A stretch of 64,000 nucleotides of DNA, from contig OZ281501.1 of NCBI GenBank assembly GCA_965637545.1, positions 15,314,001 through 15,378,000 of the forward strand, in the 5' to 3' direction. The notes under the pieces are model-generated. The model was given only the letters and a program-made list of their open reading frames with translations. It had not been told where the DNA came from and made no database searches. This stretch comes from Phallusia mammillata (taxonomy: Eukaryota). Below, piece after piece: positions 1,210-39,200 of the stretch; the first letter of the stretch is position 1; every line of letters begins with the position of its first letter. Position numbers and translations under genes: made by a program.

Positions 1210-4200
1210 TTAGGGATTATCATTCATCGTGGATTCAATCCAACTTTGGAACTTGGAAACTTCTGTGTAAAATGAAGGAAACACAAATCCTTTTCTGTCA
1301 ACGTGAGCACATCTGTAGCCAAAGCTGACAATTCCAACTTGAATCCAACATGATTCGCCGGTGTTCGGGTTGTTGTACTTTAAACAATGTTTGTTATGTT
1401 TGTTTACTTGCATTGGTGCAATTAGAACAGCGCATGCTATGAAAGCAAAGCACACATTTCAGCGCATCTTATTCTGTACCCTTGCCAATCAATTTAAAAG
1501 ATAAAGGCAAATACAAAGGTATTGTGATGTTTTATGCCACAGACAATATGGAATTTACATTGGACACAGTGTCACGTTTTTTCTCAAACGAATGAGGCCT
1601 TAAAAGTAAAGTCCTGTCAATTATTTGACAGTAAAGTGGTGTCAATGAAAAAATCATTCAAAATATCCGTAAAACACATTTAAATCCTTTACACCAGTGG
1701 ATGGTTTAAAGCAGTAGTTCTCAAACTGTGCGTCGCGACGCCCTGATACGTCGTTTCAATTTTCCAAGGGCGTCGCAGAATAGTTGCGTTTCGTGGCTGA
1801 ACTCAGTTTATCTCATAAAAATTAGGTTAATACGTTCAGTGCGGTTGACGTATATGTACGTCCAAAGACGTTTTGCGTAGAATATGTATTGACGTTAAAT
1901 TACGTTCTTGATCAAAAATGCTGCTGCCCGTTAATGTACGTCGAGACCAAAAGCCCATGCAGCAAGTGCGTGATCGGCGCGTGTCTGGGGCGACGCTTGG
2001 CGGGCATTAAATTTGGTTTTAAATTCCTCATTAACTTTTATTTGCTGGTGCGTCGCAAGTCCAAAAAACTTTTCCAGAGGCGTCGCAACGAAAAATAGTT
2101 TGAGAAGTTTGAGACTGGTTTAAAGTATTAGAACTGTGTTTATTTGTTTCAATAGTTTTAATTTGACCCTCCATCGATTACAAATTCTCCTGGTTTTTGC
2201 TAGATTGTTTGCGAGTAAAGTAGAAAAACGAAAAACGATGTGAAAATCATGCAAAATTTGCGACAGTGCGTCTCGTATAGTTTACCAACCTCTCGCATAA
2301 GAGGTCCACCACTGTCTCCCTGACACGTGTCAGACAATCCGGTTAGCCAATCAGGGCTCTTCACGCAAATCATGCGATCTGTATACGTCAAATTTATTCC
2401 CGCAAGCCTGTTTATCTCGGTAATGGCATAATTGCATCTGTTGATTAAGGTATACAAATTAAAGTATTTAAAATATATTTTTAGTAACCAAATACCCTGA
2501 AGACATCCTAAAACTTATAAAATCACAAAATCTTAAAAATAAAGCTAACATAACCTCAAATAACTTACACGGCATCTGATTGAATTTGTTGGACAGCTTT
2601 TTTAAGACGGTATGGAACCGTACGGTCGTTTGACAAACTCCATCTACCGAATCCTGTAACAACGAAAGGTATTCGGCTATCTTCAACAAAGCGATCGGCA
2701 AGCCATCTTCCTGCATACAGAATTAGTTGTAAATTCTTGAATAGAAACTGTCTATACAAATTTACGACAAACCGCTCTGACAGACGGAAAACGTTAACTA
2801 CAAAACCTTTTGATGCAATCATGTTTTCTTTTTAATCCACTTGCCTTTCTTTTGACATTTCACATTCTCAGAGTCTCCATCTTCAATTATTTGGTTTCCA
2901 TTCTGGTTCACGTACTTGTCAATGGGGACACAAGTATTGCTGCATGGCAGACATATTGGTCTCACATAAGGTGAAAGGGGGATAGTTCCGTCAAACTCTG
3001 GTCTTCTGCTTGACCAAACCCAATTTAATCCATCCCTGATGGCGTGAAGTGCCACACCGACTCGAATCTAAACAACTTGTCAATAGTAATCTCAGCAACG
3101 ACCTGGGCAGACGTTGCAAGTTTTTACTTTTTACTAGGTAAGCAGTTTATGAAACAAGAGCTTAGAGAGGTAGTAAAGCTGCTCTATGAGGAAATTAGAC
3201 TTTTCTAAGGTTTCGAAAACTTTGGAGTACCAGTGCCACGTCATAATCAAAGTTGTTTCTTCCATGGCGATGTTCTCCATCAAAACCTTCATGAATAAAA
3301 ATTCGTCGCGGTTGGAACACTTTCATGGCTGGGTTAATAGCTTCTCTTGGCTTTGGCCGCACGAAAATTCCTCACAAAAATATGCAACAGTTTAAAGGTT
3401 GCCATTGGACAAAGGTGCGCGTAATAACATTGTCCAGGTTGTAATTACCTACTGCCACAGCCAGATGCCGTGTCATCTGTTGAATGTCCTCCCATTGGTC
3501 AAATAGAGACGCGGATGTAAGAACCCATTGCTGATTGATAAGGCTTCCACCACCGAAAATGCCTTTAAAAGTCTGTGAGTTTTAAAAGTCTGTGAGTGAG
3601 TTTAAATAGTTTTTTCTCAAAATTCGATTTCAGTAACACTTATATTGCATAACAGAGTCAATTCATAAAATGCGATTAGGTAAGAACTAAGCAAGCATTC
3701 AAAAATTGCTGCACAATATATCAAATGCAGTTAAATTAATATGCTAAATCGCAGGACAATTAGCTTCTTTGGAACCCGAAAATCGTGGTTGTAACAAATG
3801 CAATTTACTTGGTAAACAGTTAAACCATCTTTAGGCATTATTGCAGCTTGCCACGGCCAGGCGCTTTCCGTTTTGCTTCCTCCGATGACGCGACCAAACG
3901 ATGATCGACTAAAAATACTTTCTTTGTCGCCAGCTTGACCGCATTTCTTTAAATCTAAAAGAATTTGTTGTGTTGTTTGTGTGACTATTACATTTCAATT
4001 TTGGTAACATTTCGGCAAGTTAATTGCGCCCCGTCAAACCGTCATTTTTAAAAACAATTATTTAAAACATAGTTTATGTGTATAAATTGAAAAAATAATA
4101 ACATCTCACTGTGGCAGCATTGATCTATACATAAGGTCAAAAACGCATAAAAGCGCGTTGTATGTTTTAAATTTTACAACAATACTAAAATCTCCAGTTT

Positions 4201-7200
4201 AGTCAGGCATGTTAGATCGTGTACCTGTGGTAAAGTTTGCGACTTTGTCGAGGTAAGCATTGAGAAGGTAGTAGTTTTCTATTTTGATAAATTTGTCCCT
4301 GTCGCTTGCTAGCAGTCTCATCTCAGTCTCGGCATAGCTAGTCCCCGGGTACACAATGTTGCATGGGCTACATGCCGCGATAACGTATATCTGACGAAAA
4401 GTTAAACGTTATGTTTATTGGTTTATATTTGCCTAAGACACAATCTTTTCGTTATTGTGGACGCATTACACGTGCGATTATCACCAAGTTTAAAATTTGC
4501 TTGTAATTTGAAACCTTGTTTGTATAAACTCTCAAAGACTTTTTTCACCTTAAGAATATCACCAAATTGATTAAGCATTGTCGTTCTGGTTTCATACGGA
4601 TTTCCTCCAAAATTTGTTTTTCCTACATAAAACAAAATATCCTTTTTAAATTCTTTTAAATTATTTTAAATATGACTTGAAGGTAAACATATATCTTTGT
4701 TAAACAACGTTAAATTATAAAACAGTTTTGCCTAATTGCTAATGTGGATTTACTTTTCACACTAAACAACCTGTTATCTTGTGGGAGTTAAGAAACAGCA
4801 AACTTTAACACCCTTAATCGCTAGCTTCGTTTATTCTGCCGTCAAACAATTGTAGTTTGTCCTTTTTTAATCTCTAGTCTAGTATGGTTCCGAAACAAAA
4901 ATAAGCTATTATTTTTTAATTAATTTTATTCACGACAGCTCATTTTGTTTGCATTTGTATTTTTGTTCTATATTTTAAACAAAATTGTTTAGGATAGGCA
5001 ACATAATTGTTTTCAACATTTGAAACAGTAGGCCACATCATTTTTTTTATCATTTTTTTTTGTTGTGACAACTTCGCTGCTATTCCCGAGCAGTGATTGT
5101 AATGTGTTCTACCAATCCAAATGCTTTGATATGGGTCCTCGATTTGTTTATATGGGTCCCCGGTTTGAGTCATTTTCTGTAGGTGCCCGTTCGTGGAAAC
5201 GTTGTCGTGGAAATGGTGATGGGTTGCTATGTGTCTGAGGTGACACTTTTTGTTGCATGCTACTTTTAGGCCTCGAGCCCATAAGCTAAACCAGTGTGTG
5301 TGAATTTTGTGAGCCGCTATTGCAAGGCTCTAAGTCTTTGTAGACTTGGAGAGACAGTATTTGATGTAAGATCAAATTAACTGGGGTTTTGCAACTAATT
5401 CTGTTTAAACTGTAACAAAACAAGTCCAACACCTTACCATCCGTAAACAAAAAGACGTGACGTTCTTTTTCGTCATCAATATGAAAACCTAATATCAATT
5501 GCCTGTGAACTTCCTCAAGCGCCTTTTTAGTTGCCGTATTGTTTCCTATTGTTGTAGCCAAAACTCCTGTAAGGAAACGTTGGAGTTTTTGAGGCGCAAC
5601 ATTTGGTATCAAATTGTTTTGTATTGCAAGTAAGTTGTATTGTTTCCCACCGTTTTCAAAATCCGCTTGGCACTTGTCGAGTCGCAAAAGAACAGCGGTT
5701 GAGTTTTGTTCGTTGTTTTGCAAAGGAATCCTCACTTCGAAATCACTAGCAAACACCATTAAACCATAGTTTATGGTTCCTCGATCATAATTGGAAAGCT
5801 GTTGAAAGGTACGAATTTAAAAGATAAACGTAATTTGTGCACCTTACCATCTTACCCGTTTCACTAAGTTTTTCGCAAACGCGATTGCATACTTGAACTG
5901 TATGGAATTAATGCTTTCTGATACATCGAAAATAAAAGCTATTTCGTGGCGTTTGTTCTCTGTTGTGGAAATCCAAGGGGCGTGGCCCTGCTGAGGAAAG
6001 CTTGCAACGCTTGCAACTCGTCTCCGAGGATCTGTAAACCATGAGAAAAAAGTTTTACCAAAAGATTATAATAGACCATTTTCAAAAGATGAAGTTTTTT
6101 TAACCAGCAAACACCTAACGATGGGCGTAAAACGAACAGAGACAAACGTTTATGTAATTAAATAAATGATTTAAATCATTCTCACACAAGCTTCGGCAGG
6201 TCGTCAACAAACCACTCCATCGTCCGTTTTCCGTGCACATACGCCTCGCTGCTCCGATTAAAACATAGCCTGGCTGGCAGCGAAATTGTACGATCGAGTT
6301 AACAGGGTAAGAATCACGACTTTCTGACTCAATAACAAGGTTTCGGCCATCTAGATGTCGCGTTGGATCATCGCAGAAAATTTCTGAAATCGCAGTTTAG
6401 GGTTTAAGTTTTAAAACGTTGTAACGCTGCTTAACAGTGCTCACACAATTAAAGAGCAAATATTGCGAAATAGTCAGAATTTTAAACACACGTGTTACTT
6501 AGCAGAACCATAATAGTAAAATACTCATATTAGTTTATATGTTATAACCTAGTTATGCTTCCGTAAAGGTGCGTAAAAGTAAAGGTATATATTCACCTGC
6601 ACACTGCACTTGAGCACGTGTCCACGATCTTCGGGAAGTGCAACGAATTTGAGGACCTACTTGCCCCATCCCGGGTGGACAAGTATACTCAACAAAGTCG
6701 TCAAACTGAAAGTTTTCGGTCACCCGTATCACAGTATTGTTGACGAAACGATAAACTTTGAATCCTTTGCTTCCGTAGGCGCTAGGTGGATTTCCATCAC
6801 ACTGTGATTCTATGGCAGAAAAAGCAAGAAGTGCAGACCGGAATGTACGTTCGGTCTGGGTTTTGTAAATCATTTAAATTTATCCGATAGCGAATTAAAT
6901 CTTTTGCATATGCCTATATGTATCTCAAGTGTTTGGACAAGGTCGAGTTACTTGATGTGCTATATGTGTTAACCACCTTGTCGATCCAATATAAAGTCCT
7001 ATTGGGCAAAATATTTATGATAAAATTGTGGAGGCTTTTTGCCCGAAATAGGATAGCTTTTTTGCCTTACGAGTGCAACACAGTTACGCAACGCGGGCTA
7101 AACATTAGGCGAAAGAAAAAAAATACATTCAGCGCATATTTTAGCATGGCTTGCATTGAAGCTTTCATTTATTAACCACTTCTTTCAACTATTGTTTAGT

Positions 7201-8745
7201 GCGGCATTAAAAATATATACATAAATGGTATCATGTTCACTAAATCACTTAAAGAGAAAGAAAATACGTACTCGGATTAAAACAGGACATCCCGCAATGA
7301 CCGTCACACTCGCAACGCTTTCGTCCTTTGCAATCAGAATTGGAATTGCAAGGTTTTCTGCAGTCTTGTGCTGCAGCTTGAGCCAATTCGGAATTTCGCT
7401 GAGGACAATCACCTGAATATTGATCGTTGTTTAACAGTTTCATACATGTTTGTATTTATGATCAAAATATGGTCATTCTTATCAGGCGCTTGTGTTTGCT
7501 TATTGCGAATTTTGCGTGAAGATCTATTTCTTTTTTATGTACAGACATTGATAGAGTCAGTAACCAGTTTAACGAGTTTGGCCAGAGGTTCTCATACGGG
7601 TTCCAATTTGCTCGTTTAGGGGGACTTTTTTTTTCCTGGAAGGAAATTTGCTGCAAAAGAGGTTTAAAGAAGAAATTCTGTGGTTAAAAACTCGTTTTTA
7701 ATGTTTGTTTACTTGACACATAAAAAACCTATCACTAGGAATATCTACAATACACAAGAAATGTTGCGGGAACAGCTGTGACAAAAAAAAAACTATAAGA
7801 ACAACTGGATTTAACTTAGCTTTTAAATGTGTTGAAAGAATTTGCGCATTTCATGTGCTTACCGCATCTTGCGTATTCGTAGCCTTCATCTTCACTCGAT
7901 GAGCAGTCATTCCTTCCATCACACAACTGCTCATTGTTGAGACAAACGCCATTAAGACATTGAAACCTACCATCACTGCACAAGCGTAATCCTGGAGTTG
8001 CTGCATACAAATGTGCAATTAATTGAACTGCCAAATATTGGTTTTGTGTTGGCAACATTTACAACACATTGCACTATGATTTTAGAAACTTTTCTCCATT
8101 TAGAATTTAAACACAGATGTTACAAAATTTGTTTTGACAGCCTCGGAATTAGGCCAACCTGGTATGGGCGGCGGTAATTACCTTGAAATACTAGTTTTAA
8201 AATCTCAGGGAACCTAATCTCACAACGGGGGCTGTCTCCCGAATTCTGTAAAGGCTTAGATTACTGCAAAAACGTCTCACCAACAAAGTCAATATTCTCG
8301 CACGCTGAGGTATAGCTTATGGCTAAGAGACTTTAAACACCAGATACAAACTCGATCAACGGCCCTAGAGAAATGCCTTTAACAAACTGACGATGCCCTA
8401 CCGGCCTACAGTGTAGGGCACATTCTAAAATAGAGCAATCAACGGTTATGAAGCACCCACCCTTGAGGAGAAGCAACAAAGGCACAACAACACAAAAAAA
8501 CTAAGATATCACAAACAAACATAGGACTCATCAAAAATTGACTACTTAGATATTTTCATAAAGATCAACGACCGGTTGTGTAACTGAACACCTTGCATTG
8601 GCCTTTGGATTTGGCCAATAAGGTTTTAAACGTCGGCGGTAAAATGTCACATGTGTTGTTGTTGTACACAACTACAGATCAACAGAAAAGTAGACTTACT
8701 TGTGATGCAAATGACAAGAACTGCAAATTCTAGAATGGCACGCAT
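1210..8745 (-). CDS. Complement factor B/C2-like mosaic protein (signal peptide-LDLa-WAP-2xCCP-vWA-trypsin-fold domain), predicted catalytically inactive; about 888 aa, 16 coding exons
   Basis: Exons in transcript order, all phases compatible (total 2667 nt): 8745-8700 (MRAILEFAVLVICIT signal peptide), 8000-7863 (LDLa CSDGRFQCLNGVCLNNEQLCDGRNDC), 7412-7272 (8-Cys WAP), 6809-6597 and 6383-6186 (CCP1, CCP2), 6031-5856 (YPRRR linker, vWA MIDAS DVSES), 5798-5438 (NTAT, FTDG), 4622-4549, 4390-4225, 3954-3809 (CG...FGR/VIGG...WPWQ), 3572-3449 (FGGGSL...WVLTSASL), 3370-3231 (DYDVAL), 3067-2845 (VRPICLP), 2710-2569, 2437-2286 (DTCQGDSGGP), 1436-1210 (GIVSFG...YTEVSKFQSWI, TAA). The acceptors of exon 12 and of the last exon are the least certain. 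CCP-vWA-serine protease order is diagnostic of the Bf/C2 family. Confidence 0.9.
1712..2117. mobile_element. Non-autonomous hAT-type element (MITE), 406 bp, in the last intron of the Bf-like gene
   Basis: Left end CAGTAGTTCTCAAACT; right end reads CAGTCTCAAACT on the reverse strand. Identical 8-bp TSD GTTTAAAG at 1704-1711 and 2118-2125. Sub-terminal GCGTCGC motifs. Confidence 0.85.
3564..3597. repeat. 17-bp tandem duplication spanning a splice acceptor of the Bf-like gene
   Basis: TTTAAAAGTCTGTGAGT x2. On the minus strand this gives two CTCACAG/ACTTTTAAA acceptors 17 nt apart. Confidence 0.9.
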
Positions 8746-11299: not shown

Positions 11300-12712
11300 A
11301 TGCAAAACGAAACAGAAACATGCCCTATGATCAACCCAGGCACAGCAAATGGTGGCAAAAGAGAAGGCTCAAAAGTAAATGTAGAAGTTGGACAACCTTC
11401 TCCTGAAAGATGGGTGATAGTTTTCATCACGTGTGTTGTGACGAGCATGCGATGTTTTGTATTGGCAGCATTTGGTCTCACCAACAATGTCATGGCCAAT
11501 TACTTTAACGTGGAGCCTTGGCAAATTGACTGGCTTTCGAATGTTCGCGCTTTAACCATTGTTTTGGTTTGTATACCCCTGTTGTTTATATTAAGAAAAT
11601 TCAGCGTGAAAACGTCTATTGTTGCAATGATCGTATGTTCTGCTGTAAGTTTAAGCCTGTCCAGTCTGGCAGTTTCATTTCGTCAAGGTTATTTTATCGC
11701 TATTTTTGGCGAGGTTATGTCTGCTCTCTCCACAACAATCTGGTTCCCACTGAAAAGCTCAATCGCTGCTGTGTGGTTTCCAGCCAACGAAATCGCCTAC
11801 GCCATTGGTATCATGTATATTGGACGGGCTGTTGGAGAAGCTGCTGGTGCTGTGATCGCCCCTTATTTAGTTTCAATCAGTGATAGTGCATCAAAGGTCC
11901 AAATACGTTTGTCCGCATTGTTTGGATCATTCGCAATTGTCACATGGGCTATCCTTATGTTTGTTGTGTTGTTTACGAAACCACGACCCAAGCATCCTCC
12001 AAGCATTGCTCAACTCAAAGTGTTGCAGTTACAAGAGTTACAAGAAAGCACTAGCTTCAAAGAAGAGCTAATAAAATTCAAAAATGTGCAACTAAAATTG
12101 TTGACCAACGTCCACTTTTTAACAGCGTGGTTTGCACGAATTGCTATCGACCCAGTTCCACGATCCACAACCACCTTGCTATCATCGATACTTCAAGCAA
12201 ACTTCAGAAAGAACGGGAATACCAACGTTGACGGAGGCTTTATGATTATGGGACTTTGGCTCATGTCGATTGTGGGCAGTTTTTCAGCAGGTCGTTTGCT
12301 GGTGGTAACTGGTCGTTATAAAGCATCGGTAGTGGTGTCCACTGGCATGGCAAGCGTTTCTTGCGTTGTTGGGATAGCTGGACTAGCAATTACTTCAATT
12401 TCGATGGTTTATGCCAGCCAAATATGTTTGGGATTTTTCGTGGGACTTGCATTAGTGAGTGTTACAGAACTTCTGGTCCAAGTTACTTACCCGACCCGAA
12501 TCACAGATGTATATGTTGTCAATCCAGTTGGCGTAGGAATCATGTTGGTCATTCAAACTACTATTGCTAGATTGTTACTCGAAAAGTTTGGACCTATCGC
12601 AGCATTTGCTATGGAACTGTTTTATCTACTGTTACCAACATGTTCGTTGCCCTTTACAAAGATGCCATTCTACCGCCAAGAAGCAGAGGCCAGCACCATT
12701 GAAGATCGATAA
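11300..12712 (+). CDS. Intronless MFS transporter, FLVCR/SLC49 family-like (paralog 1), 470 aa
   Basis: Single ATG-to-TAA ORF with about 12 hydrophobic segments. Family-type motifs RW.IV, VEPWQIDWLS, AAVWFPANE, P.HPPS.AQ and ELLVQVTYP resemble FLVCR/SLC49 (WFGPKE, PPS.AQ, E.TYP). Confidence 0.88.
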   Translation: MQNETETCPMINPGTANGGKREGSKVNVEVGQPSPERWVIVFITCVVTSMRCFVLAAFGLTNNVMANYFNVEPWQIDWLSNVRALTIVLVCIPLLFILRKFSVKTSIVAMIVCSAVSLSLSSLAVSFRQGYFIAIFGEVMSALSTTIWFPLKSSIAAVWFPANEIAYAIGIMYIGRAVGEAAGAVIAPYLVSISDSASKVQIRLSALFGSFAIVTWAILMFVVLFTKPRPKHPPSIAQLKVLQLQELQESTSFKEELIKFKNVQLKLLTNVHFLTAWFARIAIDPVPRSTTTLLSSILQANFRKNGNTNVDGGFMIMGLWLMSIVGSFSAGRLLVVTGRYKASVVVSTGMASVSCVVGIAGLAITSISMVYASQICLGFFVGLALVSVTELLVQVTYPTRITDVYVVNPVGVGIMLVIQTTIARLLLEKFGPIAAFAMELFYLLLPTCSLPFTKMPFYRQEAEASTIEDR

Positions 12713-17105: not shown

Positions 17106-18533
17106 ATGGATACAGGAAAACCCACGTTAAAGGAAACTGTCTGCAAAGTTGGCACGACCAAACCCCAAGAAGCAATCGGCGAAATAAAATCGTACAAACT
17201 ACGTTTCTTGATCGTGGTTCTTACCTTTATGACGATATTTTTTCGTGGATTTAACCAGGGCTGCTTCGGGTCCATCAACAACGTTCTGACGGGTTTTTTT
17301 CATGTTGAACCATGGCAAATAGACTGGTTTACCATTATTCAATCGGTTGTATTCATGCTTGCTACCTTGCCGTTGTCGTTCCTGGTGACCAGATGCGGGT
17401 ATAAGTCCACGTGTCTACTTATGATTGGTGTACTGATGGTGGGTGTCATGACAATCACAGTGGCATTTTTCCTGCCTCACGGCTACCCTTTGGTACTTTT
17501 TGGACAAGCAATTGCAGGTTGCAACAATTTGCTGTCTTTGTCGATTGAAACAACAACCGCTGCCGTTTGGTTTCCAACTAACGAAATTCCTACTGCTATC
17601 GCCTTCATGACAGCAGCACGGGCTCTTGGCGATGCAGCAGGTTCGGTGACGACCCCTCACTTAGTTAGTGTTGCGGACACAAGAAGTCAAGTGCAATTCA
17701 AGCTTGGGCTCCTGTTTGCCACGATATCCGTCATTTTAACCACAGTTTTCGCAATGGCTGTATATTTTTTTGAAGACAGACCACCACTGCCGCCCAGCCT
17801 CGCACAAGCTAAAGCCCAAAAAAGTCAAGAAGCCGAACGAATAAAGAACGTTTCTCTTAGCGACGGACTTAAAAGTTTCAAAGTACTTCTTGTGAAACTG
17901 TTCTGCGATCGCTATTTTTTGGTGGTTTGGGCTGTTTTTGGAATCGTCAACCCTGTTTTAAGGAACAACACAATTCTCCTGGCTTCTGTATTACACAGTG
18001 AGTTTGCCGCCAAAAATGGTTTGAATTCTTCAGCCGGACTGGTGCTTATGGTATCATGGCTTTGTTATGCCATTGGGTGCTTTAGTTCAGCGCCGATCTT
18101 AACAAGAATCAAGCGAGCTAAAGCCTTGGTGATTGTAACGGTATCTTTGGAGAGCCTCTCCTGCATGCTGTGCCTTATTGGGGTCAAAATGTCATCTATA
18201 GTCATAGTATATGTCGGGGTTGTGTTTATCGGTTTATTTCTCGGTGCTACTTCAGTTGGACTATACGAGCTGCTGGTTGAGGTTACCTATCCGGAACCAA
18301 CATTGCAAGTTACAATGCTAAACATGATTGGCCTTGGATTCATGCGAATGACCTACCCGATCATCGGTCGGGTTTTGTTGACCACTTCTGGCGCTGTGGC
18401 GTCTGTGGCATTCCCATTTGCAATGACCTCTTTGGCTGTGATATTGCTGGCCTTCAATAAGTTACCTTTTCACAGATCAGAGGCAGAAAAAATGGAGAAC
18501 CAGAAACTGCTACCTACGAAGAGAGGGGCATGA
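17106..18533 (+). CDS. Intronless MFS transporter, FLVCR/SLC49 family-like (paralog 2), about 475 aa
   Basis: Within ORF 16980-18533. The first ATG at 17106 aligns with the start of paralog 1; the upstream TTG start is not credible. Motifs VEPWQIDWF, FGQ, AAVWFPTNE, PPLPPSLAQ, YELLVEVTYPEP; about 12 TM segments. Confidence 0.88.
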   Translation: MDTGKPTLKETVCKVGTTKPQEAIGEIKSYKLRFLIVVLTFMTIFFRGFNQGCFGSINNVLTGFFHVEPWQIDWFTIIQSVVFMLATLPLSFLVTRCGYKSTCLLMIGVLMVGVMTITVAFFLPHGYPLVLFGQAIAGCNNLLSLSIETTTAAVWFPTNEIPTAIAFMTAARALGDAAGSVTTPHLVSVADTRSQVQFKLGLLFATISVILTTVFAMAVYFFEDRPPLPPSLAQAKAQKSQEAERIKNVSLSDGLKSFKVLLVKLFCDRYFLVVWAVFGIVNPVLRNNTILLASVLHSEFAAKNGLNSSAGLVLMVSWLCYAIGCFSSAPILTRIKRAKALVIVTVSLESLSCMLCLIGVKMSSIVIVYVGVVFIGLFLGATSVGLYELLVEVTYPEPTLQVTMLNMIGLGFMRMTYPIIGRVLLTTSGAVASVAFPFAMTSLAVILLAFNKLPFHRSEAEKMENQKLLPTKRGA

Positions 18534-19736: not shown

Positions 19737-19920
19737 NNNNNNNNNNNNNNNNNNNNNNNNNNNNNNNNNNNNNNNNNNNNNNNNNNNNNNNNNNNNNNNN
19801 NNNNNNNNNNNNNNNNNNNNNNNNNNNNNNNNNNNNNNNNNNNNNNNNNNNNNNNNNNNNNNNNNNNNNNNNNNNNNNNNNNNNNNNNNNNNNNNNNNNN
19901 NNNNNNNNNNNNNNNNNNNN
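19737..19920. other. Assembly gap (184 N)
   Basis: Run of N bases. ORFs 19610-19954 and 19672-19944 are artefacts of reading through it. Confidence 1.
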
Positions 19921-30200: not shown

Positions 30201-33200
30201 TTAAATAAAGAGTCCTGCCAGACTGTTGGGGCAAAAAAACTGTGTTTCACAACTTCCATATGGTAAACTTATTGCCAAAGTAACAAACGGTTGGGCAAAA
30301 ACAAAATGAAATACATTTTTAAATATTTCGTTTACACCCCGTTATTATTACCTTACACGCGGTCGATCACCTTTGAAACTGATTGTTCAAATATTTTTTT
30401 TTCTGTTTAAATATTCTCAAGGGAAATATTTACCCTCCATCGATAAATCTATTACCAAATAACATCCTAAAGATCCATACTCATATAGGCTTCTTAGTTT
30501 AATTTATTTGGAATCAATATGGCTTAATTAGGAAGAGCGAGTCAAATAATGACGACATAATCGGGATGATGGTGACGTCATTGCCACGTATACGTCACGC
30601 ATTGTGACAAAACACATTTTAGCTCACAACATTTTGTAGATAAAACATGTAATCTGCGTGCTACGTAGTAAGTGTATAGCTTTTCTATATAGACCAACAA
30701 GGTCCCTAAAAACAGCTATTGAAACACGAATAAGATAAATTTAAATGACTTGCTTCTTGCTTATATTTTATTTCGTATATCTACCGTGAAAACTATTAAA
30801 TAACAAAAATTTTAATTTCAGCTGGCAGCAGAAGGAATTAAGAAAATCCCACTGCTTAAAAGAATTCATACAAATTCCCCTTGCATAATTCATGCTTACA
30901 GTAAACAAAAAAGAAGAAATTAAAATTACAGACAGGCATCATAGAATACAGAACTAGTAAAAAAAACAATATTTATGCCAACATATATTATTTTAATGGT
31001 TGCTTGTTGTGTTGTTGCTAACGTAAGACACTGATAATACGACATGGGTTGTTACCGAGAAGTCAAAAAACAATATGTCGACTTTCTAGTCCTTTTATTG
31101 TAATGAGCAAAATGTGTGTTTGTGCTCCGGCCAAAATGTGTTTCTCAAGTTTAAGCGTTCAATAACCGTTAAAGTGACGTCGCTTGTTGCTTGTCAGTTA
31201 TTATTAGGCATGAAAAATTTACAAGCGACAACCTTGCTGTGCTGTCACATGTCAAGTCAAAGCAACAACAAAATTTAAACTATGTGTTTTTGTTCTAACT
31301 CACTTTTCTCAATATTTCTAGACACAGATTTTTCTCACTTGGCATAAATTTCGCGGAATCGACTAAATTTTTAGTAATGATAATGAGGTAAAAAATGGGG
31401 TGGACTCGAAACCTTGTACGAACTCTATTGAATACGTGGACTCGGTGTTCAATAACTATGCACAAAGAATATGAAATTTTTCTTTTACTAGATTGTTTCA
31501 TAAAAGCTTACATTTAAAGATACACAACCGTCGCCGACACCTTCCTCAATGCCTTTATTCACTACTTCTAATGTTACAATCTGTGGTTCGGATTACTTTC
31601 AATGTTGGGATACAACTTGTCTTCCACGTGAGAAGTTCTGTGATGGATTCAATGATTGCCCTGATGGTTCCGATGAAGTTGAGTTTATCAGCTTGGAGAA
31701 CGTTGTGACTGTGCCTTGTATGCCTCTCTGGCAAACTGGCCCACCCAGGTATAATGTGTTTTGGAAAGTTTCACTTTTAAGTGAGGTTAATAAAGGGTAA
31801 CCGAAGTGCTATGGTTACATAACAGGAAAAAAATCTTCATATTAAAATACAATAAATAAAAACTTTGACAACTTAAACCATTAGATCCCATCAGGGGGGT
31901 TCCTACTTTTATTTTATTTTTCTTGGATTAAAACAGCTAAAATTAAGATTTTTGCTCTTGACACTTCTACTGTACCCACGACATAAATATCCAATTAAAA
32001 AAGGCTTCTAATAATTTTATGCAGATCAATACACTGAAAAGGGTTAAAAGACACTTAGCTGAAAAGAGGATGAAAATCAAACCATTTTAAAATTTGTGCA
32101 CACAAATTATCACGCAACCATTTTTTCCAACATTAGGTTTAATAAAAACGGCTAAATCGACTATGTTGAGATTTTTTCGCCTTTTTATCAGCAATTGCAT
32201 TTACTACCAAGAGACTTTTACTTTAGGTTTTGCTTGCTGTGGAACAACAACTGGGTGTGTGATGGTCAGAGCCACTGCATCGAAGACAGGGACGAAGTTT
32301 GTGCAAACCAATGCCCCGGTTTACCTGAAACTTATGTTTGTAACGGATACCCCAATTGCCCAGGTAGTATTTTTGCACCACTACACTAAAACCAATTGTT
32401 CACAAGTGCGTACATGTTGGTTAAACATCCCTGGACACAAATGATGCTGAGCGTAAATTCAGGCCCAAATCAAACCCGGTTTATTGAAACTCAAGTCCGA
32501 ATTCGACCCGAGTTACAACTCTACAAATCCGACCCGACTAGAAACTCATTCTCATTCAAAAGTCATTGCAGGGATATGATAAGTTTGCATGCTGTTCCGG
32601 GTTGGGTGACACTAAAACACTGAATATTGCGGAACGTCGCAGAAACCGCTAAATATCGGGTAAATTGCTGACGGTTAGTGCTATTGGGGTTGGGTTGAGG
32701 TTTTATAATAGTATATGATTCAAAAAATGTCCCTGTCTAAAACTTATTCAGCTATTTCCTGACATTAGGCAAAAATGCTATTGCGGGATATTGCGGGACG
32801 TCGCGGGTTATGGCGGGACGTCGCGGGAGATGGCGGGACGTCTCAGGCGCGGAATGTATTCAGCGGAATTTTTTTCATGATTTTCTATAATAAAACCTTA
32901 TCGCAACCTTAGTAGCTCTAACCGTCAGCAATTTAACCCGATATTCAGCGGTTTTCACGACGTCCCGCCATCTCCCGCGACGTCCCGCAATGTCCCGCAA
33001 CATTCAGTGTTTTACTGTCACCCTACGGGTTCGGTTTGAAAAATTGTTTTAATTGGGTCAACATTAGCATTCAATACGACAGTTTTGATCAACAGAGATG
33101 TTTTTGTTGGCAAGCTAGTACTTTTTGTTTCATGTAATTCAAACCCATTACGCTTCGAGTAAAAAACCAATTGTCTCGAAATGTTTTTATATAAGTCATG

Positions 33201-36200
33201 CAGCTGAAACTTTTTGTTACTATCGGCAGAGAAAAAAAACACAAAAACGTAGGCAGACGAGCATTTGAAAAGAATAGCACTTATCAGGCAGCGATCGGTT
33301 AATTTAAGAGCTGTCCATTTTGCTTCATGCGTCGGGAGTGTCTCATTATTAAAAGTCAAAATATTTTGTGAGCTCTTTACTGAATTCACTGTGTCATGAA
33401 AAAAGAAAAGTTTAGTCGGCGTTTTCACTTATACTTCTCAAAATGTAACAGTATAACCACCGACATGTTGAGACACCTAGCGGTAATAACCAAGTACTAC
33501 AAATTAATTACTAGATGGCAGTGATGAGCTGAATTGCACGGCGTTTTCCTGTGGGTCCGACACGAACATTACTGTGTATGAGGGTCAGTTGTGTGACGGA
33601 ATAATGACCTGCCCAGATGGAAGGGATGAATGCATGTCCAGTTGTAACGATTGTTTTTGCGATGGGGTAAGTTACAAACACTTCTGAGGTTAGGTAATTG
33701 CACTTTTGTTTAAAATTTCATTTTACTGGTGTGAACATATTGGCTTAGAGATATGGGATAATGTTGATTACGTAAATTGGGCAGTTGGTACAGAAAAGTT
33801 TAACTTAAAGAGTGTACTTGGTCGTAAAATGCGGATAAAACAACTGTTGGTCCATAAAGAGCAAGAACATTGTTACATACATACTGTTTGCTTCCAAAGC
33901 ATTTTTGCTGCAATTAGTTTTTATTACACAAATCTGCAACAAAAATACAGTCTACAGATTTTTAGACCTTCAAATTTTTAGTTACAAATACCACTAGCAG
34001 TACAAAAGGGTAAAAAATATTTACACTCTAGTAATTTACAATTGCTTGAATTGTATTCAGATTTACGACATATGCGCAAACGGTGAGATTTGCCAGGTTG
34101 CAGACATTTTCTGCAGATTTTGCGCTGACAAGTCCTCCATTTTCCCGTACGACAAGGTATTGTGACAATTTTTCTAAAGTGATGCACAAAAGAATTCCAG
34201 TTCCCAAATCAGTGGTTTTTAATCGGTGTGAAATTGTGTACTTTCGAAAGGAAATTGTATACGAATACAATAATTGTTCTTTTAAGTTTTGGTTGAAAAC
34301 GTTAGTCATAAATCTGCTCGAAATTCGAACATGGTGATTGCCTTTAGTGGGAAACTATACTAAAAAGATTAATAACCACTGACCTTGGGAATGTTTAGGT
34401 TTATTTACTACAAGTTTAAGATAAACTTTTCTTTGACTGAGAAAAAACAATAAGGCAATATTCCCAAAATACCGTAAAGGTACGAGGCCAAGCATTTCAA
34501 AATTTAGAATCAAGACACATATTCGATACCATTTGCCAGTTTGCGTCACTATAAGAATGAAACTTGGGGCATCAAAAAATGAAACAGCAACACAAAAAAT
34601 TTCTACATGAGGTCTTTTCTAACAGATTTGTGATGGAGAAATAGATTGTCCAGACGCAAGTGACGAACTTTTTTGCAACCAGACTTTCGTGTGTGACAGC
34701 GGAGAGGTGGTAAGAAAAGTACACTTCTGTAAATAACATTTAAATCTACTACAACTTGATATTTTTCGCAACTGCTTTATCATCATTTTTTTCTATTTGC
34801 AACGTGTCTTTCTTCGCCCTTGTTGTGGTGTTGGTTCTTCGATACTTTGACTTGCCCAAGTAAACAACTTTATGCTACAATATATACTCGTAGCTGTTGA
34901 TGGTCTATTTATCAAAATGTTTGTTTGACCAGCAATAGACGTGTAAAAAGTTCACAACTCTGCTTTCGTGTTCAGATTTATCGCATTTCTATTTGCGATG
35001 GAATCAGAGACTGCTCGGATGGAAGTGACGAAGCAATTTGTTCAGTCTGTCCCAACAACAATAAGTAAACATGCTTGCGTTTTAAAACATCTGCATAAAG
35101 AATCAACGCTTTCATTCAAGATAGAGTTTTGATTTTTTTTTCCTTTCTAAAAATAATGTGGCAAAATAAAAAAGAACTTTGTTAACTTGTTAATTAAAAA
35201 AACTAAAGCAACATACAACAAGAGTTAAACGACGCACTGATATACCTCATGTCCTTCTGTATACAAATATACATATTGAATGACAGGCAGCAAAGTTTAA
35301 AAACTTGCCAGCTATACCAAGTTTTGTGTACTTAATCGTAGTTTAAGTTATGTCAAGGTTTTGTACGCCAAGTAAACGTTTAAATGCAATTGGACCGCTA
35401 CAATGGATTGCACATAGCGCATTAACCCAACTCAACTCAATTCGAAAACATTTGATAATCAACACGTTTTTTGGTGCAGATTGATTCCGAGATTCCAGTT
35501 CTGCGATGGCATTAACGATTGTGGCGATCATTCAGACGAATGTGGCGGTCATTGCCAATCTACATGCAAGTAGGTATTACAATGAGCTTATCTATAGCGG
35601 GTAAGTTGCCCTGCAGAGGAAAACAACCACTTGGGGCCGCTTTGTGCTCAGATTTATTTGCGGATCAGGGGAGTGCATTTCCAGCGCTTGTTTCTGCGAC
35701 GGTATCATCGATTGCGCTGATGGCAGCGATGAGATCATCGGTAACTTTCCGGGTGAAGTTCATATCATGTGCAACAACACCAGAAATCATTACGGTGGTT
35801 CATGTTTGCTTCAGCAGGTATGAAGTTATGGATTCGTTTTCTAGTTGTTGTGAGACAAGAATTTGGAATGAAATGAAAGTGTATAGATAGTTGAAAAAAG
35901 GTTGCATTATTATTTTCGCAAAAAAGTACTTGGAACTGTTGGATTGTTTTTGTATCTTAAATTACTGTGATGATATTTGGTGCATCTATTTAAGGCAATT
36001 GATTTACTTACTTTCAAACGAATTTTAGGTCAGAAGATTTATAACATTAGTAATGTTATAGCGAGTCTAAGTTAAAAACATAAGAAAAAAACACTGACTT
36101 TTTCAATCCAAACTTGATCGTTAAACTAGTTGTAGAAAAGTCTGTAAACTTCCCTGAAAACGCACTTTTGTGCTGAGATCAGTACAACTTTTCCTATTTT

Positions 36201-39200
36201 GAAAATGAAGAAAAGTTTTGACAATTCTTTGACGCCTAAACAATAGTGGTGTGTATGTGATGCTGGGCTACCAATAACGGTTTTGGGTTTAGTTGTAAGG
36301 TGGTATACTCCTGTTGGTAACAAAACCAACACAACATTTTACTACAGGATTCATGGTTGTGTGATCTGGTTGACCACTGCGAGGGAAGAGTGGACGAATG
36401 CCAACAGGATTGCCACAAAGCCTCGTTTTGGTGTGATACTGGAAAGTGTATAAGAGTTGAATCGTTTTGCGACAACGTGCAAGGTACATAGACGTTAAAG
36501 TTTTGATCTTTTGTTGAAAACAAAGTTAAAATCCCTTAAATTGTTGGCTAAAATGGTACTTTAATTTCTCGTCGGTTGGTAAACCAGTTACAAGAATTGA
36601 AACAAAATCACAACCAATATTGAATAAAAGTTTCCAAATTTGACATTTTCATCATATTTGTTGTTTACTGTCTTAGTTCGTGCTGTTATTACAAATATGG
36701 TTTGGTCCACTGATCTATTTCAGTGCAGTTCTGGCGAGTTTTATTTCAGTGCAGTTCTGGCAAGTTTCGTTCTCATAGTGTTTGGCCAATCAGTAACAAA
36801 GGTTGCACACCCCACCTTTAGACACATACTGAAACCATTATGCTTTTGAACTCAAAATAGTAGAAGAAGCAGAGTTGTAAGTCAGGCCGGATTCAGGGTT
36901 GGGTTCCTTCATAAAAGCGGGCTTGATTCGGGCCCGACTTTACACTCTGTGTCAGTACTTTTTTAACTAGCTAAGTAGCCAGTTGTTGGACCTGACCTAA
37001 TGTCAAACAGTCCTAAAACGACTTGTTCAGACCAATTGTCTATCATTGTCTATTGCGTTTATCGTCTTGGTCTTTCCTGATTATATGCTTCAATATATGG
37101 GCCTGTCAATCAAACGTGCGGGTCTAAACGGGCTTCTCAAAACGATTCGGGTTCGGGTCGAGTTTGGGGCTCCAATTCCAGTCCCCTTTACAACTCTGAG
37201 ACGACGATATTTATGTGATACAGATTGCGAAGACGGGACAGACGAAGTGCCTTATGCTGGGCAGTCTGGGCAATTTCCATGTAAGAACGTGTTTCACAAC
37301 GATCGGGAATGCTCACTTAGTTTGCAGCATCCTTGGACATGCGATGGACTGCAGCAGTGCACCAATCGAAGCGACGAATGTTTACCTTATTGTGAATCAT
37401 CGTTTATTTGCGGCTCCGGCGAATGTATTAAAAGAGATTGGGTAGGTGTTTTGTTCGGCTAACATGATTCATGATGTTTATGAGCGACATCATAGAAGCT
37501 AACTATTGTAACCTCTTTGTTTTTCATCTTTGGGCACATTGTATCCTCAATGAGGCAAGATGGTATTAACATAAAAAATTCAAGTTGACCTTTAACTACA
37601 AACATGAGCATAAAAAATGCATCTATCTATTAAAACGCATTTTTTGAACTTTAAACTGGATATATAGCCATAAAATGCTAAAATTGTGTTAAAAGAGGAC
37701 TGCAAGAAATTACCCATGTTAAAAGGTAATGTATCATAACTTATTTCTTGCAACAAATTCAACTGTATCATATTTCTTTGTTTTTAAACCTTGCTCCAAA
37801 CGTCATTTGAATAATCAACTACAGATATTCACTAAATGCAAGTTCAATTCAAAGTTTTTATTGTTTCAATTTGCTCAGGTGTGCGACGGAGATATAGACT
37901 GTGGTGACGGAAGCGATGAACACACAACAGACAGCGAAGCCTTCACCTGTGCAAAAACCCGGCATCCAATCACCAGAACATGTCTTTTGCCTATCTCAAT
38001 AACCCAAGACAATATAAGCGACTGTGACCGAGATATGGATATCTTAAGCCGCGTGATGCCAGTAGAGAGCGACGCAAAAGGGGTAAGCACCTGTTACATG
38101 TTGATTAATTAATTTGGGTTGAAATATTCTTTTTAATAATCACAATAATAATTTTTATTGAAGTTTTAATTTCTCCATGTTTACCTACTAAAGATTATAA
38201 TTTTTAAATTGATATCCATACTACTTTTTTAAATGTTAATAAATTTCTGCTATTACATTACTAACATGCAATATGTGCAAAAATCTTATTTTGTAATCAT
38301 GTATTTTTTTATTAGAATAAAAATCAGAGTTTTTATATCTATGGCTTGGATGCAACCAAATTTTGTGAACAAAAAGTTACCAGTATTTTCTTAAACATTT
38401 CAATGAATTTCTGTGATGCACCTTTTTGGTTCAACATCCTCGATCCGACAAAAATGCGAATTTCATAAACACGTGATTTCTCAAAAACTTTTTTTTCACG
38501 GGGTTCGAACCCAGGACTATCCCGGGGACGAATCCCGATCAGGTTTTTTATGTCTGTATATGGGTCAGGCGCGTCAGACCGTTCGGCCAAGTTCCTTTCC
38601 TTACAACGGAAAACTACTGGTAAAAAACACCGGTTGTGGCCGAACACGTGTTCTGGTGTGACAAGCATCAAAAACGGCAAAAAACGTCGGTAAACACTGC
38701 AAATCGAGATTTTAATTCATTCCAACATAGCAGATTGAAACCACAAGAGAGCTCAACCTTCTCGAAAAGTGGTAAACCAAAAGCAAAATGGCGCACAAGC
38801 CATACCAGCTTGGTGAGTCAGCAAGAGGTCAAATCGCGGGGGTGCAGCATTGGCCCTCTTATCTTCAGTTAGATGACTCACACAGCCAACAAACAGCCGT
38901 TAATTGGCATATGGCATTCAAAACGTTGTAGCGGTGGTAGGAAAGCGTCAGAGATTAGAAAAGCTAAAATGCAAATACGTGGGTAGGAAAAAAATGCCGT
39001 TGGTCTGCATTGGAAATCTAGAATGCTATTTTCCCTGATTTCACATCGACCCGCTAAAGCCGTATGTAGAGAAACTGAATCTGACTGCAGCAAGCATGAA
39101 GCGAAGTGAAACAAAACGCAGTGGGTTGACGTTCACAAGTTACGAACAACACATTGACATGACCTAACTTGACATAATTGTACCGACGTGGTAAAATTGA

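What the first reader, a model, noticed from the sequence alone, without database searches (positions are those of the whole stretch)
6186..8000. Unusual Bf ectodomain: LDLa + WAP (C-x-C variant) + only two CCPs ahead of the vWA
Seen: four symmetric phase-1 exons each encode one module: LDLa, an 8-Cys WAP-like domain (CPQ...CRKPCNSNSDCKGRKRCECDGHCGMSC, with CEC replacing the usual CC), CCP and CCP. Established: vertebrate Bf/C2 has three CCPs only; LDLa-bearing Bf is described in Ciona; WAP followed by CCPs is the layout of the nematode LEV-9 and fly Hasp synaptic scaffolds. Inference: exon shuffling put a WAP-CCP unit onto a Bf core. A protease-inhibitor-type WAP fused to a dead protease fits a regulatory or scaffolding role, possibly outside immunity.
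Basis: partly seen in the sequence, partly recalled or inferred. Interest (0 to 1): 0.7.

Follow-up and report, generated by a model that had tools for sequence, protein, structure and literature searches.

The report
Shortened sea-squirt factor B paralog
The four small exons are real, but the WAP module is a normal part of every sea-squirt complement factor B examined; this copy is a trimmed, probably enzyme-dead paralog that has lost three of the family's usual seven N-terminal modules.

Summary
On the minus strand, four phase-1/phase-1 exons encode LDLa (8000..7863), an 8-Cys WAP with C-x-C (7412..7272), and two CCPs (6809..6597, 6383..6186). All four pass the Pfam cut-offs. A signal-peptide exon (8745..8700) precedes them, and vWA and trypsin-like exons follow.

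The closest protein is the Phallusia mammillata "CiBf-3" (1018 aa), which reads SP-LDLa-WAP-CCP-WAP-CCP-CCP-CCP-vWA-protease. Ciona and Clavelina factor B proteins carry the same chain without the LDLa. The WAP-CCP unit is therefore old and family-wide, not a new graft onto this gene.

What is special here is loss. WAP2, CCP2 and CCP4 are deleted in frame. That leaves only the middle CCP of the vertebrate-type triad.

The conserved Gly-Arg before the vWA domain and the catalytic His are also gone, while the MIDAS motif is kept. The best reading is a secreted, non-catalytic factor B paralog, either a decoy/regulator or a decaying copy.

The scan had already seen WAP-bearing factor B genes and this gene's missing His elsewhere in this genome.

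The parts
8700..8745 (-). Exon 1: start codon and signal peptide (15 codons plus 1 nt), GTAAGT donor, phase 1
   Evidence: It aligns without gaps from the Met to the signal peptide of P0001: score 35 against shuffles of 16.4+-3.5, reached by 0 of 2000. The alternative in-frame ATG at 8058 is not significant. The Ciona Bf-1 locus also has a separate signal-peptide exon.
7863..8000 (-). LDLa exon (138 nt, phase 1-1), 6 Cys, acidic CDGxNDC...EDE cluster
   Evidence: Pfam Ldl_recept_a 36 bits, E 8e-9. 71% identical to P0001 residues 17-61. Splice sites.
7272..7412 (-). WAP exon (141 nt, phase 1-1), 8 Cys with the C-E-C variant; orthologous to WAP1 of ascidian Bf
   Evidence: Pfam WAP 25.3 bits against a cut-off of 20.8. 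76% identical to P0001 residues 63-108. All 8 Cys plus Asp and Gly are invariant in 24 modules. The PDB profile search hits elafin and SLPI. AF2 pLDDT is 90.4 and the Foldseek top 10 are all WAP proteins.
6597..6809 (-). CCP exon (213 nt, phase 1-1); orthologous to CCP1, the ascidian-specific CCP that follows WAP1
   Evidence: Pfam Sushi 22.8 bits. 71% identical to P0001 residues 111-179. The best matches in Ciona and Clavelina Bf are also their first CCP. It aligns with the first CCP of LEV-9.
6186..6383 (-). CCP exon (198 nt, phase 1-1); orthologous to CCP3 of the ascidian chain, which matches the middle CCP of the vertebrate Bf/C2 triad
   Evidence: Pfam Sushi 46.4 bits. 72% identical to P0001 residues 286-350. 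The best matches are Ciona 232-291 and 253-312, the third CCP. P0001 residues 250-727 align collinearly with human C2 residues 46-511.
6384..6596 (-). 213-nt intron where the WAP2 and CCP2 exons of the family would lie (deleted)
   Evidence: tblastn with P0001 finds no match to its residues 180-284 here. Intron length.
6032..6185 (-). 154-nt intron where the CCP4 exon would lie (deleted)
   Evidence: tblastn with P0001 finds no match to its residues 351-423. Intron length.
5856..6031 (-). Linker plus first vWA exon. The MIDAS motif DVSES lies at 5913-5927. Ala-Pro at 5976-5981 stands where relatives have the conserved Gly-Arg.
   Evidence: 65% identical to P0001 residues 424-480. Linker comparison. 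Coordinates checked.
1210..5796 (-). Remaining vWA and trypsin-like exons up to the stop codon. Ser stands in place of the catalytic His at 3507-3509. Asp (DYDVAL) and GDSGGP are kept.
   Evidence: tblastn with P0001 covers its residues 424-1014 at 57-84% identity, with no stop or frameshift inside the aligned exons. TSASL against TAAHV.

Best explanation
This is the 5' half of an intact-looking, lineage-specific paralog of the ascidian complement factor B (Bf) family.

Shown: the ascidian Bf N-terminal chain is signal peptide, LDLa in the Phallusia type, then WAP1-CCP1-WAP2-CCP2-CCP3-CCP4 ahead of vWA and protease. In the Ciona Bf-1 locus the five module exons that could be mapped are each a separate exon with phase-1 splice boundaries, so any of them can be lost or duplicated without breaking the frame. 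The window gene keeps LDLa, WAP1, CCP1 and CCP3. It has lost WAP2+CCP2 and CCP4 by two in-frame genomic deletions. The C-x-C WAP is the normal form of this module and is shared with nematode LEV-9.

Inferred: the gene keeps only one CCP of the C3b-binding triad and has a shortened linker. It has no Arg at the conserved Gly-Arg|Ser position, which is the presumed activation site, and no catalytic His. It does keep an intact MIDAS. The secreted product therefore cannot be a C3 convertase. Most likely it is a non-catalytic ligand binder, a decoy or regulator that docks through its vWA domain and the WAP-CCP arm. The WAP is more likely a rigid binding or spacer module than a protease inhibitor, because its Cys1-Cys3 segment does not match the inhibitory loop region of elafin or SLPI.
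For: - Module calls and splice phases.
- The closest relative, P0001 (Phallusia mammillata CiBf-3, 1018 aa), has the full 7-module chain.
- Exon-wise orthology to WAP1, CCP1 and CCP3, at 65-86% identity to P0001 against 55% or less to Ciona and Clavelina.
- WAP modules in Ciona, Clavelina and Phallusia Bf.
- One module per phase-1 exon and a separate signal-peptide exon in the Ciona locus L001.
- Signal-peptide exon of the window gene.
- P0001 CCP2-4 are collinear with human C2/Bf CCP1-3.
- LEV-9 homology.
- WAP fold, with only the Cys3-Cys8 half aligning to elafin and SLPI.
- Gly-Arg lost, MIDAS kept, His replaced by Ser.
- All 22 module Cys are conserved while overall identity is about 72%. 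This argues for past constraint on the folds.
Against: - There is no RNA evidence. Because every module exon is symmetric, skipping would also stay in frame.
- The product was not found among public proteins in the searches that recovered P0001 and P0012.
- The activation site of ascidian Bf has not, to my knowledge, been mapped experimentally. 'Non-activatable' therefore rests on positional conservation only.
- The combined loss of His, Arg and three modules is also what early decay of a redundant duplicate would look like.
- The decoy function is pure inference.
Confidence: 0.72

Rival explanations
1. It is a young unprocessed pseudogene or unexpressed relic: a redundant tandem duplicate of Bf that has begun to decay (modules, activation Arg and catalytic His lost) but has not yet picked up a stop codon.
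For: Several functional elements are lost together. No matching protein appears in the public collections searched. The gene sits at the edge of a large tandem cluster of Bf-lineage genes, where redundancy is expected (earlier scan notes).
Against: Every exon from the signal peptide to the stop codon is open, with canonical splice sites. All 22 Cys of the four modules, the MIDAS motif, the catalytic Asp and the GDSGGP motif are kept despite about 28% amino-acid divergence. Both deletions remove whole exons cleanly.
Confidence: 0.2
2. One reading: a recent exon-shuffling event put a LEV-9/Hasp-type WAP-CCP unit onto a Bf core. This created a new regulatory or scaffolding protein in which the inhibitor-type WAP goes with the dead protease, perhaps acting at synapses rather than in immunity.
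For: The WAP-CCP unit is truly of the LEV-9 type: it has the same C-x-C, 56% identity in the WAP core, and a collinear CCP. LEV-9 and Hasp have a WAP together with a chain of CCPs (in Hasp the WAP comes first) and act at synapses (PMC9083331).
Against: The same unit is present in His-intact Bf of Phallusia, Ciona and Clavelina. The fusion therefore predates the split of these lineages (two ascidian orders, from memory of ascidian taxonomy) and is unrelated to the loss of His. This gene has fewer WAP-CCP units than its relatives, not more. Only the Cys3-Cys8 half aligns to inhibitor WAPs.
Confidence: 0.05
3. It is an assembly or model artefact: the missing WAP2, CCP2 and CCP4 exons exist in the real gene but were collapsed or lie elsewhere.
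For: Tandem families are prone to collapse, and the window holds one N-run (19737-19920).
Against: The N-run is 11 kb away. The sequence across 6032-6596 is continuous, with clean splice sites on both sides. There is no trace of the missing modules anywhere in the window. The linker also carries an independent 10-residue shortening.
Confidence: 0.03

Closest known systems
Phallusia mammillata 'CiBf-3 complement factor B-3 precursor' / C3/C5 convertase (UniProt A0A6F9D9Y8, CAB3230286.1; P0001)
   Same: Same order of signal peptide, LDLa, C-x-C WAP1, CCP1 ... CCP3 ... vWA and Bf-type protease. Per-exon identity is 65-86%. The MIDAS motif, the catalytic Asp and the catalytic Ser are shared.
   Different: P0001 also has WAP2, CCP2 and CCP4, a linker 10 residues longer, the Gly-Arg|Ser site and the catalytic His (TAAHV). 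The window gene lacks all of these.
Ciona intestinalis complement factor B-1/-2/-3 (e.g. Q5H875; Yoshizaki et al. 2005, cited in PMC4714745)
   Same: WAP1-CCP1-WAP2-CCP2-CCP3-CCP4-vWA-protease, with the same C-x-C WAPs. The Ciona Bf-1 locus has a separate signal-peptide exon, and the five module exons that could be mapped (the CCP3 exon was not recovered) are each separate with phase-1 splice boundaries.
   Different: There is no LDLa in the Ciona sequences seen here. They have the full module chain, an intact Gly-Arg and an intact His. Identity to the window exons is only 24-46%. Their WAPs score just under the Pfam cut-off (20.0 against 20.8), which probably explains why they are not labelled WAP.
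Vertebrate complement factor B / C2
   Same: CCP - vWA (MIDAS) - chymotrypsin-fold protease order. P0001 aligns collinearly with human C2 and Bf from the first CCP of the triad into the protease.
   Different: Vertebrates have exactly three CCPs and no LDLa or WAP. The window gene keeps only the counterpart of the middle CCP and lacks the catalytic His.
LEV-9 (C. elegans) and Hasp (Drosophila): secreted WAP + CCP-chain synaptic scaffolds
   Same: N-terminal WAP of the same C-x-C-D-G-x-C-G-x-S-C subtype, followed directly by a CCP. LEV-9 against Phallusia Bf WAP1-CCP1 gives 36% identity over 107 residues, E 1e-21. The window WAP core is 56% identical to LEV-9.
   Different: LEV-9 and Hasp consist of a WAP and CCPs only and cluster acetylcholine receptors. 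The LEV-9 WAP is dispensable for that role (PMC9083331). The window gene continues into vWA and a protease-like domain.
Inhibitory WAP domains (elafin, SLPI)
   Same: Four-disulfide core. The Cys3-Cys8 half aligns, with E about 0.01 from the profile search. These proteins are the top structural matches.
   Different: There is one extra residue between Cys5 and Cys6. The Cys1-Cys3 segment does not align, and the model puts a short helix there. That segment carries the protease-binding loop in elafin and SLPI (from memory of those structures).

Membership tests
WAP four-disulfide core (Pfam PF00095) | Score at or above the Pfam gathering cut-off | tested here: met
   25.3 bits against 20.8, E 1.9e-5, for the exon alone.
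WAP four-disulfide core (Pfam PF00095) | Eight Cys with the spacing C3-x5-C4-x5-C5C6-x3-C7-x3/4-C8 | tested here: met
   Eight Cys with the right spacing, except for one inserted residue between C5 and C6. HMMER places a one-residue gap there against elafin and SLPI.
WAP four-disulfide core (Pfam PF00095) | WAP fold | tested here: inconclusive
   The AF2 model has pLDDT 90.4. The ten best Foldseek PDB matches are all WAP proteins (elafin, SLPI, nawaprin, omwaprin, anosmin-1), but E is 0.15-1.7 and TM is about 0.5. Disulfide pairing was not checked.
WAP four-disulfide core (Pfam PF00095) | Canonical protease-binding loop (needed for inhibitor function, not for fold membership) | tested here: not met
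   Only profile positions 20-47 align to elafin and SLPI. The N-terminal segment does not align and is modelled with a helix.
Complement factor B / C2 family | CCP(s) - vWA - chymotrypsin-fold protease in this order, with Bf/C2 as the closest relatives | tested here: met
   tblastn with Phallusia Bf covers all parts. That relative aligns with human C2 and Bf across CCPs, vWA and protease.
Complement factor B / C2 family | Triad of three CCPs next to the vWA domain | tested here: not met
   Only the counterpart of the middle CCP is present. The CCP2 and CCP4 exons are absent.
Complement factor B / C2 family | MIDAS motif DxSxS in vWA | tested here: met
   DVSES at 5913-5927. The GNNTA and TDG motifs are also present.
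Complement factor B / C2 family | Arg at the activation (scissile) site in the CCP-vWA linker | tested here: not met
   The Gly-Arg conserved in Phallusia, Ciona and two Clavelina Bf, 12 residues before the first vWA strand, is Ala-Pro here. That this Arg is the cleavage site in ascidians is inferred by position only.
Complement factor B / C2 family | Catalytic triad His-Asp-Ser | tested here: not met
   The His position reads Ser (TSASL against TAAHV). Asp and GDSGGP are kept.
LEV-9 / Hasp WAP-CCP scaffold proteins | N-terminal C-x-C WAP followed directly by a CCP | tested here: met
   LEV-9 identity is taken from cluster names.
LEV-9 / Hasp WAP-CCP scaffold proteins | Protein made of a WAP and CCPs only; synaptic function | tested here: not met
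   The window gene continues into vWA and a protease-like domain. Function and expression are not testable with these tools.

The most novel reading that the evidence does not exclude
The gene encodes a natural dominant-negative factor B. This would be a secreted protein that still docks on C3b-like ligands through its MIDAS vWA domain and one WAP-CCP arm, but can be neither activated (no scissile Arg) nor catalytic (no His). It would therefore damp convertase assembly. That would be a regulator type made by exon deletion from the enzyme itself, in an animal lineage whose complement regulators are poorly known.
Probability: 0.2. Interest if true: 0.55.

Novelty: new variant of a known kind. 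Interest (0 to 1): 0.3.

Why it matters
The main value is to correct the record. The 'unusual' WAP is a standard but poorly labelled part of ascidian factor B. It scores just under the Pfam cut-off in Ciona and Phallusia and above it in Clavelina. It is homologous to the WAP-CCP head of the synaptic scaffold LEV-9. This ties a complement protease arm and a synaptic CCP scaffold to one ancient two-module cassette.

The gene itself is a clean example of how symmetric phase-1 module exons let a mosaic protein be trimmed in frame. If it is expressed, it is a candidate non-catalytic regulator of the ascidian C3 convertase. If it is not expressed, it is an ordinary decaying duplicate in a tandem cluster.

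Tried and rejected
No splice-junction or expression evidence was obtained.
All searches were exon by exon by reference, or used stored public proteins.
- HMMER search of representatives with the 176-aa vWA reading frame gave only two hits, one real.
- Word search with the whole of P0001 was swamped by sushi-repeat proteins.
- Word search with P0001 residues 20-230 returned only the query, so stolidobranch Bf (Halocynthia, Styela, Botryllus) could not be examined directly.
- P0001 is not on any contig on record, so no paralog DNA was available for dN/dS.
- Literature: Yoshizaki et al. 2005 and the review sought under the id PMC2480602 (recalled from memory) are not held. Searches for WAP + factor B + Ciona, for CiBf and for LDL terms gave no paper describing WAP modules in ascidian Bf. 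My memory that the 2005 paper called the extra Cys-rich modules 'LDL receptor domains' could not be checked.
- Start codon at 8058, in frame with the LDLa reading frame: rejected in favour of the separate exon at 8745..8700.
- Hidden module exons in introns: none found by tblastn. The Cys-containing ORF at 8336-8500 has no Pfam match.
Full report
**What is there.** The finding lies on the minus strand of a sea-squirt window with about 37% G+C.

Four exons have canonical AG/GT sites: 8000..7863 (138 nt), 7412..7272 (141 nt), 6809..6597 (213 nt) and 6383..6186 (198 nt). Each is entered and left in phase 1.

I searched them one by one by reference against Pfam, and all four pass the curated cut-offs:
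- Ldl_recept_a, 36.0 bits
- WAP, 25.3 bits against a cut-off of 20.8
- Sushi, 22.8 bits
- Sushi, 46.4 bits

**The rest of the gene.**
- A signal-peptide exon lies at 8745..8700. It has 15 codons plus 1 nt and a GTAAGT donor.
- It aligns without gaps from the Met to the signal peptide of the closest relative. The score is 35 against 16.4+-3.5 for shuffles, reached by 0 of 2000.
- The in-frame ATG at 8058 does not align significantly.
- Downstream, the linker and first vWA exon start at 6031, after a 154-nt intron.
- The remaining vWA and trypsin-like exons run to a stop codon at about 1210. There is no stop or frameshift inside the aligned exons.

**Closest relative.** An HMMER search of 1.8 billion representatives with one vWA reading frame found P0001.
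- P0001 is a 1018-aa Phallusia mammillata protein. It is named 'CiBf-3 complement factor B-3 precursor' or 'C3/C5 convertase' (A0A6F9D9Y8).
- Its layout is signal peptide, LDLa, WAP1, CCP1, WAP2, CCP2, CCP3, CCP4, vWA, protease with an intact TAAHV.
- tblastn of P0001 on the window and exon-wise blastp assign the window exons to LDLa (71%), WAP1 (76%), CCP1 (71%) and CCP3 (72%).
- P0001 residues 180-284 (WAP2, CCP2) and 351-423 (CCP4) have no counterpart in the window. The introns at those places are only 213 and 154 nt.
- The protease exons are 81-86% identical to P0001 and 54% or less (one exon 72%) to any other protein. The window gene and P0001 are therefore close relatives nested inside the family.

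**How general the WAP is.** I scanned ascidian Bf-like proteins from the second word search with Pfam at a lenient threshold. I also applied a Cys-pattern scan.
- Ciona Bf (Q5H875 and Bf-1), several Clavelina Bf-like proteins and both Phallusia proteins carry the same C-x-C modules.
- In the vWA-bearing forms the order is WAP1-CCP1-WAP2-CCP2-CCP3-CCP4.
- The WAP score is above the Pfam cut-off in Clavelina (37 and 33 bits; WAP is already in their precomputed Pfam lists).
- It is just below the cut-off in Ciona (20.0 bits) and Phallusia (18.8-19.8 bits). This probably explains why the modules are not labelled WAP there.
- In an alignment of 24 such modules, all eight Cys, the Asp after Cys6 and the Gly after Cys7 are invariant.
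- The 'CEC instead of CC' is therefore the family signature, not a peculiarity of this gene.
- This agrees with earlier follow-ups of the scan on other Bf genes of this genome. I re-tested their claim here rather than relying on it.

**LDLa.** The Ciona and Clavelina Bf sequences seen here pass from the signal peptide straight into WAP1, with no Pfam LDLa. LDLa is present in P0001 and in the window gene. A published table lists LDL_A for Halocynthia Bf and none for Ciona (PMC4714745).

**Exon design.** In the Ciona Bf-1 genomic locus (L001) the signal peptide is on its own exon. WAP1, CCP1, WAP2, CCP2 and CCP4 are each one exon. Their splice boundaries, where they could be read, are in phase 1. 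The CCP3 exon was not recovered at the identity threshold I used. With this design, whole modules can be deleted without breaking the frame. That is the simplest mechanism for the two losses seen here.

**The LEV-9 link.** One word-search hit, P0008, belongs to a 90% cluster that contains C. elegans 'Protein lev-9' (NP_001335574.1) and CBR/CRE-LEV-9.
- LEV-9 starts with a WAP of the same C-x-C-D-G-x-C-G-x-S-C type, followed directly by a CCP.
- Phallusia Bf WAP1-CCP1 against P0008 (the C. remanei member of the LEV-9 cluster) gives 36% identity over 107 residues, E 1e-21.
- The window WAP core is 56% identical to C. elegans LEV-9. The window CCP1 exon aligns with the first CCP of LEV-9.
It is not a recent transfer.
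- LEV-9 and Hasp are WAP-plus-CCP synaptic scaffolds, and the LEV-9 WAP is dispensable for receptor clustering (PMC9083331).

**Is the WAP an inhibitor?**
- A profile of the 24 modules hits elafin and SLPI in the PDB (E about 0.01). Only the Cys3-Cys8 half aligns, with a one-residue gap at C-x-C.
- An AlphaFold model of the window exon is confident (pLDDT 90.4) and has a short helix in the Cys1-Cys2 segment.
- Its ten best Foldseek matches are all WAP proteins, but the statistics are weak for so small a domain.
- From memory of the elafin and SLPI structures, the protease-binding loop lies in the part that does not align. I therefore infer a structural or binding module rather than a canonical inhibitor.

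**What is special about this gene.**
- P0001 aligns collinearly with human C2 (residues 250-727 against 46-511) and with factor B. Ascidian CCP2-4 therefore correspond to the vertebrate CCP1-3 triad.
- The window gene keeps only the middle CCP of that triad, plus the ascidian-specific WAP1-CCP1.
- Its linker is about 10 residues shorter than that of P0001.
- A Gly-Arg followed by Ser/Gly lies 12 residues before the first vWA strand in Phallusia, Ciona and two Clavelina Bf. Its position is like that of the factor D site of human Bf. In the window gene it reads Ala-Pro-Trp.
- The catalytic His reads Ser. Asp, GDSGGP and the MIDAS motif DVSES are kept.
- The missing His had already been reported by another follow-up on this window. 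I confirm it.

**Interpretation.**
- Shown: this is a module-deleted Bf paralog whose WAP is the ordinary WAP1.
- Inferred: the product cannot act as a C3 convertase. It is either a non-catalytic binder (a decoy or regulator using vWA plus one WAP-CCP arm) or a duplicate in early decay.
- For function: all exons are open, the splice sites are clean, and all 22 module Cys are conserved at about 72% overall identity.
- For decay: several functional elements are lost together, the gene sits beside a large tandem cluster, and no matching public protein was found.

**Limits.**
Everything for the window was done exon by exon.
- Stolidobranch Bf sequences were not reached.
- The 2005 Ciona Bf paper could not be read.

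**Verdict.** The WAP-in-Bf layout is family-wide and had already been met by this scan on other DNA of the same genome. The short chain is a derived variant of modest interest.

Noticed in passing
window 11300-12712 (+) and about 17109-18533 (+): Two intronless genes of the major facilitator superfamily (Pfam MFS_1, 60.6 and 88.9 bits), similar to each other. They lie upstream of the 5' end of the Bf-like gene and are transcribed divergently from it.
   Followed up: partly
window 5976-5981 (-): The Gly-Arg conserved before the vWA domain in Phallusia, Ciona and two Clavelina Bf reads Ala-Pro in this gene. The linker is also about 10 residues shorter, which creates a Pro-Arg-Arg-Arg-Val stretch of unknown meaning at 6015-6029.
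   Followed up: partly
proteins P0012 (Phallusia), P0036 (Ciona), P0013/P0018 (Styela), P0015 (Clavelina): The same C-x-C WAP-CCP head also sits in front of Bf-type protease domains that have no vWA domain, or at internal positions of long gene models. The Clavelina models P0010 and P0011 (about 1700 aa) look like two adjacent genes fused.
   Followed up: partly
window 5567-5650 (-): An 84-nt stretch inside the vWA region is open in frame but has GT..AG ends. It aligns as a gap against P0001, so it is most likely a very short intron rather than coding sequence.
   Followed up: partly
window 31555-31677, 35650-35733, 37046-38112, 41275-41625 (+) and 44240-44659 (+): Many LDLa repeats are followed by a rhodopsin-type 7TM segment (Pfam 7tm_1, 36.5 bits). 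This is the LDLa-rich receptor gene noted separately by the scan.
   Followed up: no
window 19737-19920: The only N-run of the window (184 N). It is far from the gene studied and was left untouched.
   Followed up: no
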